Positions 12,310-18,558 of a DNA stretch of 64,000 nt are shown here, piece after piece. The DNA lies in NCBI GenBank assembly GCA_033442325.1, contig JAWQFM010000015.1:1338858-1402857 (forward strand), written 5' to 3'. The translations under genes and the position numbers were made by a program. This stretch comes from Salpingoeca rosetta. Its lineage: Eukaryota > Protista > Choanoflagellata. The notes below the pieces were generated by a model, which did no database searches, was not told the origin of the DNA, and worked only from the letters and a program-made list of their open reading frames with translations. Positions within the stretch are counted from its first letter, which is position 1. Each line of letters opens with the position of its first letter.

Positions 12310-15024
12310 ATGTCATCACAGAGGAAAACACAAACTTACAACAACAAACGCTCTGCTTTCTCTCGCATCGTGCCTTTGTGGTCAGCGATCAACGCCAGCA
12401 ACACGAGAGGAGTCATGGCTTCCACTTCACCGACCGATCTTGATGTGTGGGACACCCAGAATGAAGAGTGCGAGCAGGAACAACTACCACACATCCCCAG
12501 AGTTGAGAATGGCGACGCCATTCTCCCCGCTTTGCCTGAAACCGAGCCTTCAATGCACACTTCTCCGGCTGGTGCAACCCACCCTGCCCACCGTCTCCCA
12601 CCGGCACCGAAGGGTTCGAATACCGCCAAGGCCAAGGAGCAAGCCTCCATGCAGCAGTCCAAGCCTCTCAAACCCGGAATCAGTTCTGCTCAACTTAGTG
12701 CTGCTTTGAGCGAATCCCCAACCAAGAAGCCCAAGATCGATTCACCTGAAAGCGGCGCCACGAAGCGGACACATCGACGTGACATTGCGGTGCAGAAAGC
12801 ACCAAGTCGCGTAACGACCGCGAGCAGTGCTTCCTCGGCCAAGGACTCAAGACAAAGCAACACAAAGACCAGTAACACCAAGACTGCCAACAAAGAGTCC
12901 AGTCACACCACAGCAGCTCCGTCACGCCGCGTCTCCTCAACCTCGTCATCAGTCTCAACATGTGATTCTTCCTCAACGTTGTCTTCTCCAACGCTTCCGG
13001 GTGATACCTCAACCGCCTCGTCTTCCAGCACCAAGCAGACCACCAAGCAGACCACCAAATCGTCCGCTGTGCCCCCGCAAGCAACTGCATCGAGCACTGT
13101 CATGCCCTCGTCGAGCATTGACCCGGTGCCAACACCTCAGCCCAAAAAGAAGAAACCGACAGCGACCAGCCGACCCAAAGCCAACAGTTTCACTATGGCC
13201 ACCACAGCTAGTGAGGGCAACGCATCATCGTCCTCGTCGTCTTCTGGCTCCCGCTCTTCCTCGCCTTCGGTAAAACTAACCACCAAGCCCGTGGCCGGTT
13301 CAGCTTCAAAATCTTCGCCTGCTTCCTCCAAGCCAACCACAAAGCGGAAGAAGACAGCTGTGCGCGGAAAGGGTGGAGAGTCCAAGCAACCCACAGATAA
13401 GAAGGGCACGCCAACAAAGACAAGGCGTCGTCGTAGTAAGGCAGGCGCACCCTCCAGCGAGGACAACTCTATCTCTCCGCAGCGGTCGTCATCTACACAT
13501 GTGCCATCATCAGTTGGAGTGATGCCGGCCAGCGCGACCACACATGCACCAGTAGCAGCATGTGCGGCTTCACCAGGCTCGTCTGGGTCTCCCCGCGCCT
13601 CTGGTACGAATGGCGATGGTACTCGCGTCACAGCCACCACGAGTACATCAAACGGCACGGCCAGAGCGAGCGACGACGATGGCCAAGACCTGCCACTGCA
13701 GTTTGTGGCGCTGCGCTGTGTCAAGGAGCAGCTCCCACCAATCTTGCAGCCACACTTTCTGGAGAACATTGACATGCGCAACCCAAGCAGCACCATTGAG
13801 GAGATGCAGATGATGTACTGCTTCGTGACGTTCATGGCCATCAGCTCTATGACTGTGTTCGAGCAGAGTACCACGAAGCAGCAAGACTTGAAGGATGCTC
13901 TCAAAGCGTTTCAGGTGCGGAAAGATACGCTTCGGTTGGATCGCTCCGCTCTCGAAGCCCTGCTTCGCTTCCATGCCGAGATGATTGACCTGCGTATCGT
14001 TGCCGACGCGAGCGAGCTTGACGAGGCAACCATCATCAACGTCGGCAGCGACTCGGCCATCTTTGTCATGAACCCGTGCGGCGTGCTGTTCCGCGCCAGC
14101 GACATTGCCATGGACGAGGAAGCCACGGACCTCAATGACGACACGGCGGTGGGCGCGCTGTCACCGCCGCACATTGGCGACGACCCCGACCTCGACACGG
14201 CCGTCGGAGCCATGCACGCCAGTACCCCTGAGCAGCACGGCTTTGCCGGCGAATTTACGGAGCCGATTCGTGACCTGCAGAGCATTCCCACATCCCCGAT
14301 TGACCAGCAGCAAACGGGCACCGGCGCCCCCAACATCTACCCGCAACAGCAGGCCGTGGGTGCCAGCGTGTTTGAGCGCATCCGCACCGTGCTACTGTCC
14401 TTGGAGCTGGACATTGAGAGAGACAGCGTTGACAAGGCTGCACGGTTGCCGTTTGATGAGCTTGGCGGCATCCTCATGTTGGTGCCCAACTTCAACTCCC
14501 TGTACGCACAGACGCGCTCGCGTGCACAGCAGTTCTTGCAGCAGCAAGGCGTTCCCGAAGACAAGGTGCTGGTGGTGAAGTGCAACGCAGCGTGTGCTGA
14601 TGAAGTGAAGACTTTCTGGCGGGGGGTGGAGACGAACAGGGACAAGCTGTTTGTGGTGCTGCATGATGAAGCGCACTGGGCCATCGACAGGTCACCAAAT
14701 GATGACAGCTCAAGTGGTGTGGCTGACCTGTTCCTCAACCAGCCCAGAAACAAAGGGGTCAAGAACGCACGCAACCTTGTGCGCTTGCTGGTCACAGCCA
14801 CACCCTATGCTCTGCAGACCGGGAAATCGGCAATCCCTTTGGTCAATGAGATCCACTGGGATGCCGTCACAGGCGGCAGCGAAGAATCGTCTGGTGAGAG
14901 AGTGTGTGAGAGAGGGTGTGTGTGCGTGTTTATGTGTGCGTGTACACGTGTAAGTGTAGTTGCCGCACCTTGTCAAGCAGTTCTCACGTAATGATCGTCC
15001 ACACACACTCACATGCAAACATGT

Positions 15025-15091
<67 letters not shown>

Positions 15092-18000
15092 AGAGAACCA
15101 CGGGCCGCGGTACTTTGGGATGTCCGACCTGCAGGGGCAACATAAGGACCCCAAGCGACAGCGTCTTGTCATGGACAGTTCATTTCATGCTCTGGTGTCG
15201 GAGTGCGTTGGGCGTCGTAAGCCAGGCACACGCGAACAACTCATGGCTAAGTTTTTCCAGTGTTACGAAGCGGCCTTCTTGCTCGCTTTACATGATATCA
15301 TGGGGACAAAACTGCTAGACCGAGAGGAACTGGAGAGCCACACGACACCCTTGACGCTGCGCATGATCACCCGCTTCCTCAAGGCGACGACCAGCACCAA
15401 CGGTCACGGACACATGCTCCTCATCCGTGTTGTGAGCAACCCCATGGGCCGCGCGTTGACGTTGAGGCTGAGAGAGCTTCGCGCCAAGCTTGGCCTCGAC
15501 AAGCGGTTTGCGGTATTGCAGGACACCAGCGCCGACCCGCTGCGACGCGTGCTTGAACTTGATGAGCGCAGCTCCGAGTGCCTCTCGCGACTGCAGCAGA
15601 TGACGGGCGCGAGTGGCATTGCCAGCTATGAGCAGCTGGAGCACCTTCCCTGCATCCTCGTGCTCTGTGACAAGGGCCGCATGGGCGACACCTTCCCCAA
15701 GTCGCTGCAATACTACGACCTCCGCCTGCGCTACGGTAGCTCCTCCTCCTGCACGCGCACCTACATGGAACAGGACCTCGGACGCATGTTCCGGTACGCG
15801 CGGAGTCTGGACGAGCTGCCCATGTGCCTGTTGCCGCCAACGGCACACGAGTGCCTCCAGCGAAGCCTCATACACCTCTCCCCCGACCGTAAGGTGTGTG
15901 CGTTTATTGGCGTATGTATTTTTGTGTATGTGTGTATATGTGTGTGTTATATGTGTTCATCATCATGTATGTGCGTGTGTTGATGTGTGATGGATCATCC
16001 CCACATTCCAACTACTTGCATCCCGCCCTAAGCTTGTATGTACAAACACACACTCCCGTGTCAGCCCCAATTACTTCTTCACGCTCACCGTCTGTCTCCT
16101 CTCACTCTAGGCGAACATTTCAAAGCCACCCAAAGGTGAACAGATACCTCGACCAAAACCGAGTGAAAACTGGTCATCACGGAACGATTCCCTCTTCTAC
16201 CGCACGTATGCGCGCCCAACAAGCAAGAACTACGATGAGGGCAACCGCCGGGGTACAGACCCACGTCGCTTCCTCCTGCAGGGCAAGCCGCAGGTGGGGA
16301 AGACGGGCGCATACCTGTGGGCGCTCAAGCTGCTCGCTGAGCACCTCAACATGCCACCAGGGCCCACAGAGACGGAGGAGGTGGTGGTGTGCTGTGACGA
16401 TGACGACTTTGACGACGAAGGCAACGAGCGGGAACTTGACATGGACGAGGATGAGCAGCAGCAGCAAAACCACCGCGGCGTGCTGCCTGTACACACAGTG
16501 GTGCAATCCCTACCCTTTGTGGCGCCACAGCCCGGCAAGTATGGCGCCATCATCATGGACCAGCGTGTGCACGCAGCGCGGCTGGCAGCAGCAGAGGCAG
16601 CGGCACACGGCGACAATGGCGACGTTGTTGTGGATGGTGCACCCGGGAACCGGTCACGACTCGTGGTGCGCAAGACTGTGAGCAGCGAGTATGCGCTCAT
16701 GGCGCGACCACAGCCGCCGTCAGCTCAGGCGGCAGCAGGTGGCAACGCTGTCGTGGCCGAGTTTGCGGCGCCGGTCGTGGCTGAGCTGAGCGTGAACAGC
16801 GACGACGAGATGAACCGTGAGAGGACGCTGGGCAGCCGATGGCACATTCCCGCAGCCAAGGCGGTCCTGTTCCAAGGGCTCATCAGCCGTGGCGACGACG
16901 GTACTGCTGCTACGTTTGAGCGCATTCGTGTTGAGGACCTTGACATGCCCGTCGTGTTTATGCCGTCGAGTGGGCGTGCCGCCATCGGCCTCCTCGACCT
17001 CAGCAGAACACTTCGCAGTCGTCAGAGCAACAGCAGCGGGAACAGCAGCACAAGCAGCAGTGACAACAACGGCAGTGGCGATGGTGGTGTTCACAAAGTG
17101 CTGCAGGTGATTGTGGTGAAACAGGACGAGTTTGACGCCTATTGCACGCACTACCCTGACGTGGTGGTGTGTGCGCTGCCCGAAGCTGCAAGCAGCCCTG
17201 ACAAGGGCATTGGTGCGAGCCGCGACTTCATCAAGCGGTTTGCCACGCTCAACCTCGACCTGACCCGCCACGCAGCGCGTGCTGGCGGTGTGAGGCTGGG
17301 GCGGGTTGCGAGCCTCATCCTCATGCTGGACGACTCGTGCTTGGTGTTCAAGCGCGCCGTCGTGAGGCAGGATCCCTGCGACTTTCACACTGCTGATGAT
17401 GTTGATGTTGTGGACGGCGCCCAGCATGGCGGTGCGAGCGACGATCACCAGCGAGAGTGGAAGTGGGACTGGGCGAACCGTGAGAACCGCAGCGAGTTCA
17501 CCATGGAGGACGTGCCGCTGCTGCACGTGCTGCAGCACATGCTGAGCGACCCTGACTTGCACAGGTACGCGCTGATGGGCATTTCGCGCTGGCGCCCGTT
17601 CTTGCGCAACATGCAGAGCGCGTACAAGCGGGCGCATCCGTTCTCGTTCCTGCTCCTGAACGTCGATGTGACGCGTGACGTGCACTACGAGGCAAACGAT
17701 CTTCTCTGCGAGGACATCCGCTTCAACGAGCGCTTGAACGCGCGTGATTTGTTGTTTGTCAAGTACTGCCGGTTCGTGTTGCTGAAGAAGCAGTTGGCTG
17801 AGGGCGGCTGCAGCGCCCTGTTGGAGAGGGCGCACGTGGATGCACAGAACGAGACACATTCGCGCACGTTCGAAGTTGCTGCTCTGCCAGACACTGGTAA
17901 TGATTTCAGTGCGAAACTCGCTGTCACCCTCGATAACATCCCGACTGCTGAGCTCATTGCTGCTGCTGAGGGTGACGCGAGTGCACTGTTGGACCGTCTG

Positions 18001-18558
18001 GCAGACCACCTCGTCACGATCCTGGGACCCGGTCTCGTGTCATTGCTGCAAATGGAGCTTGTTGAGCCCCGCATGCTGTGCATGCCTGCAGGCACATCAT
18101 CGCGGCCACATCAAGTGCAATGCCGAATCTGCCTCAAGGAACCTGGGCAGCAGCTGGACATGGTGGGATACACCCGCCTTCGAAGCACCCTCGCGTACAT
18201 TGCGACGGTCGCACAAACACAGGCGTCAGTCCCGCTATCCATCGTGCTGGACTTTGTGCGCAAACATTTGATCCCTGTGCCTGCAAGCACGCGCGTCTTC
18301 ACAATTGGCGAGCGGCCTGAACGCGACGCGAACGTACCCATCGCAACTGCCCCAACAGCCGTCATCGCATCCTACACCACAAATCCAATTGAAGTGAGGG
18401 CTCTGACAAGCAACTCTGAGTGGCAATGCTTGCTCGTCGACATGTACCATGCTACTGGCGAGCATGAGGGCCTGAGATTCCTTCTGTCCGTGGCGCCGGC
18501 CAACTCTGAAGCCTATTACTACCTCCACTTGGGCTGGGTGCTTGCGATCAAGCGATAG
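12310..18558 (+). CDS. GREB1: GREB1/GREB1L-like protein (~1943 aa): permuted SF2 helicase-like region plus C-terminal TAGT/JGT-type glycosyltransferase
   Basis: Exons 12310-14893, 15094-15893, 16111-18558 (5832 nt, in frame). Motifs LFVVLHDEAHW, LPCILVL..KGRMGDTFPKSLQYYDLRL..CTRTYMEQDLGR, PRRFLLQGKPQVGKTGAYL, GIGASRDFIK, ILMLDDSC, FLLLNVDVT..LCEDIRFN, KKQLAEGG resemble GREB1 throughout. Alternative start at 12415. Confidence 0.88.

What the first reader, a model, noticed from the sequence alone, without database searches (positions are those of the whole stretch)
14640..16330. GREB1 homologue retains a complete, circularly permuted SF2 helicase/ATPase motif set
Seen: DEAH (14665-14676), motif III TAT (14794-14802), motif V-like KGRMGDTFP and motif VI-like EQDLGR (15768-15785) come first, and the Walker A GKPQVGKT (16282-16305) comes after them, a circular permutation. 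The Walker A exon is missed by the ORF track and appears only on splicing. Knowledge: GREB1 proteins have been described as carrying a permuted SF2-like domain, and from memory the vertebrate copies are degenerate at the DExH and QxxGR positions. Inference: this may be an enzymatically active ancestral-type GREB1 ATPase/translocase.
Basis: partly seen in the sequence, partly recalled or inferred. Interest (0 to 1): 0.85.

Follow-up and report, generated by a model that had tools for sequence, protein, structure and literature searches.

The report
Choanoflagellate GREB1 relative with intact ATPase
This gene of the choanoflagellate Salpingoeca rosetta is a relative of the human hormone-response protein GREB1 that still has every residue needed to burn ATP, whereas all sampled deuterostome animals, humans' lineage included, have lost two key ones; this intact state is the norm for the family outside animals and the gene family was already described.

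Summary
All five motifs lie at the stated coordinates, in the order II, III, V, VI, then Walker A. They belong to one expressed three-exon gene that equals the public model PTSG_06081 of Salpingoeca rosetta.

Pfam files the protein under cpSF2-GREB1 (290 bits) plus TAGT glycosyltransferase (68 bits). The circular permutation is therefore a known family trait, not a discovery.

In 19 of 19 deuterostome GREB1/GREB1L sequences the DExH glutamate and the motif VI arginine are replaced, although Walker A GKT is kept. In 40 other family members these residues are kept in 38 of 40 and 40 of 40.

Two predictions place the C-terminal P-loop strand next to the motif III strand, touching the DEAH strand and motifs V and VI. 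That gives one composite ATP site.

A second copy in the genome keeps all five motif blocks identical (dN/dS about 0.29).

ATPase activity is therefore likely but unproven, and the substrate is unknown. This is a new member of a known kind and of modest interest. The scan had already noted this same stretch (s1-431377) and a GREB1-like gene on another piece of this genome, probably the second copy (s1-443194).

The parts
12415..18558 (+). GREB1-like gene (public model PTSG_06081, 1908 aa). An in-frame ATG also lies upstream at 12310.
   Evidence: The spliced translation from 12415 equals P0001 exactly. P0001 is named hypothetical protein PTSG_06081 [Salpingoeca rosetta].
12415..14893 (+). Exon 1. 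It holds the Ser/Thr/Lys-rich N-terminal region, a conserved region at residues 441-639, and the first part of the cpSF2 domain.
   Evidence: The donor G|GTGAGA follows 14893. RNA depth stops at 14895.
14894..15093 (+). Intron 1 (GT..AG), largely a CA repeat.
   Evidence: RNA depth is zero at 14896-15069. The public model uses the same junction. The joint itself was not listed because the repeat was skipped.
15094..15893 (+). Exon 2: the second RecA-like lobe with motifs V and VI.
   Evidence: Pfam cpSF2-GREB1 profile positions 240-431, E = 8e-38.
15894..16110 (+). Intron 2 (GT..AG).
   Evidence: The joint is seen in 17 + 25 RNA reads of two runs.
16111..18558 (+). Exon 3: the Walker A unit, a linker, the TAGT glycosyltransferase, the C-terminal region and the stop codon.
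14332..16356 (+). Circularly permuted SF2 domain (residues 640-1175), interrupted by both introns.
   Evidence: Pfam PF20692, 290 bits. AlphaFold2 model with pLDDT 84.5 and pTM 0.86. SF2 translocases and helicases match at Z up to 12.
14665..14676 (+). Motif II / Walker B, DEAH (residues 751-754).
   Evidence: It lies at the end of model strand 145-152. D is kept in 40/40 and E in 38/40 non-animal homologues; E is replaced in all 19 deuterostome sequences.
14794..14802 (+). Motif III, TAT (residues 794-796).
   Evidence: It lies at the end of model strand 189-195. [ST]AT is kept in 39/40 non-animal homologues; animals mostly have [ST]SF.
15672..15698 (+). Motif V, KGRMGDTFP (residues 1020-1028).
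   Evidence: Residues 1024 and 1026 touch the P-loop piece in the split model.
15768..15794 (+). Motif VI, EQDLGRMFR (residues 1052-1060), with the arginine finger R1057.
   Evidence: R1057 is kept in 40/40 non-animal homologues and is L/M/T/V in 19/19 deuterostome sequences. Residues 1052-1060 touch the P-loop piece.
16282..16305 (+). Motif I / Walker A, GKPQVGKT (residues 1151-1158), placed after lobe 2 by the permutation.
   Evidence: The model has a strand at 547-551, a loop, then a helix at 558-574. GKT is invariant in 59/59 sequences. It docks beside the motif III strand and the DEAH strand.
16954..17811 (+). TAGT glycosyltransferase domain, GT-A fold (residues about 1375-1660).
   Evidence: Pfam PF20691, 68 bits. 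Model pLDDT 77; best Foldseek matches are COLGALT1, LH3, RmlT and TarP.
17329..17334 (+). Aspartate pair D1500-D1501 (MLDDSC) at the DxD position of the GT-A domain.
   Evidence: D136 is invariant and D137 nearly invariant in alignment A2. They align with the vertebrate DDSC.

Best explanation
The gene encodes a GREB1-family protein with four parts: a disordered basic N-terminal region, a circularly permuted two-lobe SF2 motor, a linker, and a metal-dependent GT-A glycosyltransferase of the TAGT (base-J-type) family.

In the motor, the strand, P-loop and helix that normally open lobe 1 are encoded after lobe 2. They fold back into the lobe 1 sheet next to the motif III strand and the DEAH strand, facing motifs V and VI of lobe 2. 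All residues needed to bind and hydrolyse ATP are present: Walker A Lys/Thr, DEAH Asp/Glu, motif III, and the motif VI arginines.

The most likely working is an ATP-hydrolysing SF2 translocase or helicase. It would move on, or clamp, a nucleic acid and so position the attached glycosyltransferase on its target.

This intact state is ancestral for the family. The deuterostome GREB1/GREB1L lineage later lost the catalytic glutamate and the arginine finger and gained three extra domains.

Shown here: gene structure, expression, family membership, motif conservation, predicted fold and predicted contacts. Inferred: ATP hydrolysis, movement on nucleic acid, and coupling to the glycosyltransferase. 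Unknown: the substrate.
For: - Family: Pfam cpSF2-GREB1 at 290 bits and TAGT at 68 bits.
- Gene model: equals the public protein. Junction 2 is seen in 42 RNA reads, and intron 1 has no RNA depth.
- Motif table. Among 40 non-animal-clade homologues: GKT 40/40, D751 40/40, E752 38/40, H754 39/40, A795 and T796 39/40 each, R1057 40/40. Among 19 deuterostome GREB1/GREB1L: E752 replaced by H/N/Q/D, R1057 replaced by L/M/T/V, GKT 19/19. The same holds for amphioxus, hemichordates and echinoderms.
- AlphaFold2 model of residues 600-1200: pLDDT 84.5, pTM 0.86, with each motif at the expected strand end.
- Structural neighbours: SF2 motors such as HsdR, Sth1, CHD4, FANCM, INO80 and DRH-1, at Z 10-12.
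- Split-chain test: the P-loop piece 1131-1180 docks on 635-1130 with score 0.88, against 0.40 for the best of 3 controls. The mark was reached by 51 of 78 solved complexes and 2 of 108 mismatched pairs. The runs agree in at least 83% of contacts, and the partner's pLDDT is at least 71. In the contact map, 1147-1149 pair with 791-793 and 811-813, and the interface includes 745-753, 1024, 1026 and 1052-1060.
- Second copy in the genome: five identical motif blocks, and dN/dS 0.29 over the domain.
- Glycosyltransferase: GT-A fold with a conserved aspartate pair.
- Tree: this protein shares a clade (SH-aLRT 96) with animal GREB1, which sits on a long stem of 1.04 changes per column.
Against: - No biochemical data exist for any non-animal member.
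- The only characterised member, human GREB1, is described as having an inactive helicase domain and acting as a protein O-GlcNAc transferase (PMC7968844).
- The split-chain test is an off-label use. It cuts one chain in two and lets ligands ride along, so its calibration counts hold only roughly.
- I could not read atomic coordinates, so no distances between K1157 and D751/E752 were measured.
- No Tet_JBP gene was detected in this genome, so the usual supplier of hydroxymethyl bases for TAGT enzymes is not evident. The control for that search was silent, so this is inconclusive.
- Structural neighbours do not separate DNA motors from RNA motors.
Confidence: 0.7

Rival explanations
1. The domain binds ATP but works as a nucleotide-dependent switch or clamp rather than a processive motor. 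ATP binding and slow hydrolysis would gate binding to a nucleic acid or to a protein partner and so regulate the glycosyltransferase.
For: Deuterostome GREB1/GREB1L keep the Walker A GKT in 19/19 sequences after losing the catalytic Glu and the Arg finger. This suggests nucleotide binding has a value of its own in this family. Many SF2 proteins act as clamps (general knowledge of DEAD-box proteins).
Against: The full hydrolysis set, including motif III and both motif VI arginines, is conserved here and in nearly all non-animal members. The nearest folds by Foldseek are double-strand DNA translocases.
Confidence: 0.17
2. The helicase-like domain is catalytically silent here too and serves only as a scaffold or nucleic-acid-binding surface, as proposed for human GREB1. 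On this view the motifs are kept for structural reasons.
For: Human GREB1 is described this way (PMC7968844, PMC6163654). No activity has been shown for any member.
Against: Structural need alone does not explain keeping E752 (38/40) and R1057 (40/40) across distant eukaryotes while the one lineage described as inactive replaced exactly these residues. The two paralogues here have identical motif blocks and dN/dS 0.29.
Confidence: 0.1
3. The motifs belong to separate transcripts or to a decaying gene, and the spliced protein is an annotation artefact.
For: Junction 14893/15094 was not directly displayed, because the repeat was skipped.
Against: Junction 2 is seen in 42 reads. Depth is continuous and on one strand over all three exons, and zero in intron 1. 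The frame is open for 1908 codons. One Pfam profile runs through all three exons in order. The second copy has the same exon layout.
Confidence: 0.02

Closest known systems
Vertebrate GREB1 and GREB1L (for example human GREB1; Shin et al. 2021, PMC7968844)
   Same: They have the same two core domains in the same order (cpSF2-GREB1, then TAGT), the same permuted motif order, and the same GT-A motifs, including the DDSC aspartate pair. They fall in the same major clade in the domain tree.
   Different: The animal proteins carry GREB1_N, GREB1_2nd and GREB1_C, which are not detected here. They have H/N/Q in place of the DExH glutamate, [ST]SF in place of [ST]AT, DP in place of the GR of motif V, and L in place of the motif VI arginine. 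This protein instead has a 440-residue low-complexity basic N-terminal region.
GREB1-like proteins of other unicellular eukaryotes (Capsaspora CAOG_009446, Planoprotostelium PROFUN_10671, Hondaea GREB1-like, Cyanophora, Mallomonas, Pelomyxa)
   Same: They share the cpSF2 plus TAGT core and an intact Walker A, DE[AC]H, [ST]AT, GRMGDTFP and Q..GR..R.
   Different: Identity in the domain is only 24-37%. Lengths and flanking regions differ, and some carry two tandem cpSF2 modules.
Canonical SF2 double-strand translocases and helicases (HsdR of EcoR124I, SNF2-family ATPases, FANCM, RIG-I-like DRH-1)
   Same: They have the same two RecA-like lobes and the same motif chemistry. Matches reach Foldseek probability 1.00 and VIA Z 10-12 over about 300-340 residues.
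   Different: In them Walker A comes first in the chain; here it comes last. No sequence-level match to any solved chain was found.
Kinetoplastid base-J glucosyltransferase and phage TET-associated glycosyltransferases (TAGT family; named from Pfam and PMC7968844)
   Same: The glycosyltransferase domain belongs to the same Pfam family, PF20691.
   Different: By my recollection those enzymes act with a TET/JBP dioxygenase that makes the hydroxymethyl base, and JGT lacks a helicase module. No Tet_JBP match was found in this genome, although that search's control was silent.

Membership tests
GREB1 family in the broad sense (cpSF2-GREB1 + TAGT) | cpSF2-GREB1 domain above Pfam's gathering score | tested here: met
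   290.4 bits against a cut-off of 26.2, E = 4.9e-86. The three exons match profile positions 2-172, 240-431 and 637-705 in order.
GREB1 family in the broad sense (cpSF2-GREB1 + TAGT) | TAGT glycosyltransferase domain C-terminal to the helicase module | tested here: met
   68 bits against a cut-off of 27.5. The model has a GT-A fold and a conserved aspartate pair.
GREB1 family in the broad sense (cpSF2-GREB1 + TAGT) | Permuted motif order: II, III, V, VI, then Walker A | tested here: met
   Residues 751, 794, 1020, 1052 and 1151.
Animal GREB1/GREB1L proper (five-domain architecture) | GREB1_N, GREB1_2nd and GREB1_C domains | tested here: not met
   None was found in P0001 at E up to 1. All three are found in Callorhinchus and Saccoglossus proteins.
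Animal GREB1/GREB1L proper (five-domain architecture) | Direct sister (orthologue) relation to the animal clade | tested here: inconclusive
   It is in the same clade of 39 rows (SH-aLRT 96), but the branching inside is an open fork. The tree was a quick search and is unrooted.
Catalytically competent SF2 NTPase | Walker A G....GK[ST] | tested here: met
   GKPQVGKT at residues 1151-1158. GKT is invariant in 59/59 sequences.
Catalytically competent SF2 NTPase | Walker B DExH with the catalytic glutamate | tested here: met
   DEAH at residues 751-754.
Catalytically competent SF2 NTPase | Motif III [ST]AT, and motif VI Q..GR..R with the arginine finger | tested here: met
   TAT at 794-796. Q1053, G1056, R1057 and R1060 are all present.
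Catalytically competent SF2 NTPase | Two RecA-like lobes, with the P-loop strand inside the lobe 1 sheet beside the motif III strand and near Walker B | tested here: met
   This rests on predictions only. The AlphaFold2 model has pLDDT 84.5 and SF2 neighbours at Z up to 12. The split-chain contact map scores 0.88 against 0.40 for the best control.
Catalytically competent SF2 NTPase | Measured ATP hydrolysis and translocation or unwinding | not testable with these tools
   This needs purified protein.
TET/JBP-associated base glycosylation system | A TET/JBP dioxygenase in the same genome to supply hydroxymethyl bases | tested here: inconclusive
   The six-frame search of the genome with PF12851 found no candidate. 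The search's control genomes were silent too.

The most novel reading that the evidence does not exclude
[quoted passage not shown] It would run on DNA or RNA and deliver a base-J-type glycosyltransferase to nucleic acid. That would make nucleic-acid glycosylation an unrecognised modification in choanoflagellates. The animal protein's role as a protein O-GlcNAc transferase and hormone-receptor cofactor would then have arisen after the motor was switched off.
Probability: 0.2. Interest if true: 0.75.

Novelty: new member of a known kind. Interest (0 to 1): 0.3.

Why it matters
GREB1 and GREB1L matter in hormone-dependent cancers and in kidney and ear development, yet the role of their large helicase-like domain is unknown because it is described as inactive in humans. 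Salpingoeca rosetta can be transfected and edited, and it carries two copies with the full catalytic set. It therefore offers a workable system for asking what the motor did before animals disabled it, and what the linked glycosyltransferase originally modified. The motif table also bounds the loss. It is present in all sampled deuterostomes, including echinoderms, hemichordates and amphioxus, and absent in choanoflagellate and filasterean relatives. The gain is incremental: the family, the permutation and its spread across eukaryotes are already in Pfam and in print.

Tried and rejected
- Sequence searches of solved structures, with exon 3 alone and with a 46-sequence profile of the domain, gave nothing useful. 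No GREB1-family structure is deposited in the copy searched.
- The founding paper (Iyer et al. 2013, Nucleic Acids Res 41:7635) is not held under its DOI, PMC id or PubMed id. I therefore could not check whether it already states that non-animal copies look active.
- Paper searches for GREB1 with Walker A/ATPase, or with choanoflagellate names, found nothing on this point.
- The Tet_JBP search of the genome was blank, with a silent control, so it is not evidence of absence.
- Read laying could not list junction 14893/15094, because it skips the CA repeat that fills intron 1.
- Structural neighbours within one Z unit include both DNA and RNA motors, so I rejected any call on substrate type from fold alone.
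- I considered that the intact motifs might be special to this gene. I rejected that, because nearly all of about 140 non-animal representatives show them.
Primate and human entries appeared only as protein rows in search lists.
Full report
**What is in the sequence.** The stretch lies in a three-exon gene on the + strand: 12415-14893, 15094-15893 and 16111-18558. Both introns are GT..AG. The spliced translation from the ATG at 12415 is identical over all 1908 residues to a public protein, hypothetical protein PTSG_06081 of Salpingoeca rosetta. This also identifies the organism. Another in-frame ATG lies at 12310, and I did not resolve which start is used.

- DEAH at 14665-14676
- TAT at 14794-14802
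- EQDLGR at 15768-15785
- GKPQVGKT at 16282-16305

The ORF list begins exon 3 at a GTG inside the Walker A, so an unspliced reading does truncate that motif.

**Expression and splicing.** Two stranded RNA runs of the same species cover all three exons on one strand at depths of roughly 5-60. They show the 15893/16111 joint in 17 and 25 reads, from 9 and 13 start places. Depth is zero across 14896-15069. The first joint was not listed because the tool skips the CA repeat that fills intron 1. That junction therefore rests on the depth profile, the open frame, the public model and the same layout in a second copy. The refuting case of 'exons belonging to separate transcripts' is not met.

**Family.** Pfam finds cpSF2-GREB1, described as a 'Circularly permuted SF2 helicase found in GREB1 proteins', at 290 bits. 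It finds TAGT, the TET-associated glycosyltransferase, at 68 bits. The three exons match the helicase profile in order. The permutation is thus the family's defining, curated trait. Shin et al. [quoted passage not shown] They list Choanoflagellatea among lineages with GREB1-like proteins. A 2018 review repeats that the helicase 'has no catalytic activity' (PMC6163654).

The animal-specific domains GREB1_N, GREB1_2nd and GREB1_C are present in shark and acorn-worm proteins. They are not detected here or in Capsaspora.

I aligned the domain from 59 full-length homologues, drawn from an exhaustive HMMER search and a named-protein search. I then counted residues at the catalytic positions.

| Position | 40 sequences outside the animal clade | 19 deuterostome GREB1/GREB1L |
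|---|---|---|
| Walker A GKT | 40/40 | 19/19 |
| D751 | 40/40 | 18/19 (one gap) |
| E752 | 38/40 | replaced: H, N, Q or D in 18, gap in one |
| H754 | 39/40 | 17/19 |
| A795, T796 | 39/40 each | mostly S and F |
| R1057 | 40/40 | replaced: L, M, T or V |
| Motif V, G1021-R1022 | GR or GK in 39/40 | mostly DP |

Amphioxus, three hemichordates and several echinoderms show the same losses. So the recollection is right and the contrast is sharp. It is a contrast between one animal lineage and the rest of the family. This gene is typical of the rest: about 140 further non-animal representatives carry the same motifs.

**One ATP site or not.** An AlphaFold2 model of residues 600-1200, built with 46 homologues, is confident (pLDDT 84.5, pTM 0.86). 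Each motif sits where SF2 chemistry expects it:
- DEAH and TAT lie at the ends of strands.
- Motif V follows a strand of lobe 2.
- Motif VI lies on a helix.
- The Walker A lies between a strand and a long helix at the far C-terminal end, with pLDDT above 90.

The nearest solved folds are SF2 motors: HsdR of EcoR124I, Sth1, CHD4 and SNF2h by Foldseek, and FANCM, INO80 and DRH-1 at Z 11-12 by VIA-align.

I could not read coordinates, so I cut the chain in silico and asked whether the P-loop piece (1131-1180) docks on the rest (635-1130), with ATP and Mg present.
- The score was 0.88 against 0.40 for the best of three controls.
- The mark was reached by 51 of 78 solved complexes and 2 of 108 mismatched pairs in the tool's calibration.
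- The runs agree in at least 83% of contacts, and the partner's pLDDT is at least 71.
- The calibration fits this off-label use only roughly.

The contact list is the useful part. Strand residues 1147-1149 pair with 791-793, the strand that ends in motif III, and with 811-813, the next strand. The interface also includes 745-753 (the DEAH strand), 1024 and 1026 (motif V), and 1052-1060 (motif VI). This is the classical P-loop NTPase sheet order, with the P-loop strand between strands 4 and 5 and Walker B one strand further on (general knowledge of ASCE NTPases). Lobe 2 closes over the site.

**Selection.** The genome holds a second copy on another contig (G000 contig 7), with the same three-exon layout. 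My model of it is 69% identical in protein overall and 80% identical in the helicase domain. The five motif blocks are identical, and dN/dS is 0.29 over the domain at dS 0.44. Loose read ends in the RNA data match this copy, so it is probably expressed as well.

**The glycosyltransferase half.** The family's conserved blocks are all present. They include the N-terminal strand with its GR, the aspartate pair D1500-D1501 in MLDDSC, EDxxFN, and the C-terminal GGC. A model of residues 1365-1700 (pLDDT 77) matches metal-dependent GT-A enzymes: COLGALT1, the LH3 glycosyltransferase domain, RmlT and TarP. The enzyme half looks intact.

**Place in the family.** A quick maximum-likelihood tree of the domain puts this protein with one transcriptome sequence (P0007). 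Both lie inside a clade of 39 rows (SH-aLRT 96) that also holds Capsaspora and the animal GREB1/GREB1L clade. The animal clade has support 100 and sits on a long stem of 1.04 changes per column. The order inside the clade is unresolved and the tree is unrooted. 'Ancestral-type relative of GREB1' is therefore supported, but strict orthology is not shown.

**How it most likely works, and what is unknown.** The intact site, the two-lobe motor fold and the cis-linked GT-A enzyme point to an ATP-driven SF2 motor that positions a glycosyltransferase. Basic clusters in the N-terminal region (KKKK at residue 244, KRKK at 310, RRRR at 337) would fit a nuclear protein, but that is inference only. The target is open.
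- The domain's relatives glycosylate hydroxymethyl bases in DNA.
- Human GREB1 is reported to O-GlcNAcylate a protein (PMC7968844).
- A search of this genome for Tet_JBP found nothing, though its control was silent.
- Fold neighbours do not separate DNA motors from RNA motors.

**Verdict.** The gene is in public databases with these Pfam domains, the family and its permutation are published, and intact motifs are the family norm. Whether the 2013 founding paper already says that non-animal copies look active could not be checked, because the paper is not held. The scan itself noted this same stretch before (s1-431377). It also noted a GREB1-like gene on another piece of this genome (s1-443194), which I take to be the second copy.

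Noticed in passing
L010:2635-8687 (G000 contig 7, about 558134-564186), + strand: A second GREB1-like gene with the same three-exon layout. My model is 1858 aa, 69% identical overall, and all five motif blocks are identical. Synonymous divergence is very uneven along the gene: dS is 0.10 in the linker, 0.44 in the helicase domain, and above 1 at both ends. This hints at gene conversion in the middle.
   Followed up: partly
P0090 (Owenia fusiformis, annelid, 1865 aa): An animal protein with an active-type cpSF2 motif set (DEAH, GRMGDTFP, QELGR, GKT). It falls in a different clade, with amoebozoan, glaucophyte and stramenopile proteins, rather than with GREB1. Some animals may therefore keep a second, intact branch of the family, or it may be a transfer or a contaminant.
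   Followed up: partly
P0018 (Planoprotostelium, 2887 aa) and P0019 (Hondaea, 4793 aa): Each carries two full sets of the cpSF2 motifs, meaning tandem duplicated motor modules in one protein.
   Followed up: no
Deuterostome GREB1/GREB1L rows of the alignment: Walker A GKT is invariant in 19/19 sequences although the catalytic glutamate and the arginine finger are gone. The 'inactive' animal domain may still bind a nucleotide.
   Followed up: partly
window 15382, 16266, 16311, 16491, 16497, 16512: A>G and T>C differences appear in part of the RNA reads of one run (X21) but not of another. Four of the six (16311, 16491, 16497, 16512) also stand in a probable DNA contig of a different run. They look like strain differences or reads of the second copy rather than editing.
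   Followed up: no
G000 contig 20 about 1279060-1280268 and contig 13 about 996467-998637: Weak matches to the cytosine-5 DNA methylase family (best E = 1.8e-8). The genome gave no Tet_JBP match. Their identity (DNMT2-like or otherwise) was not examined.
   Followed up: no
window 12310-12414: An in-frame ATG lies 35 codons upstream of the annotated start. The RNA stretch I laid did not reach it, so the true start is open.
   Followed up: no
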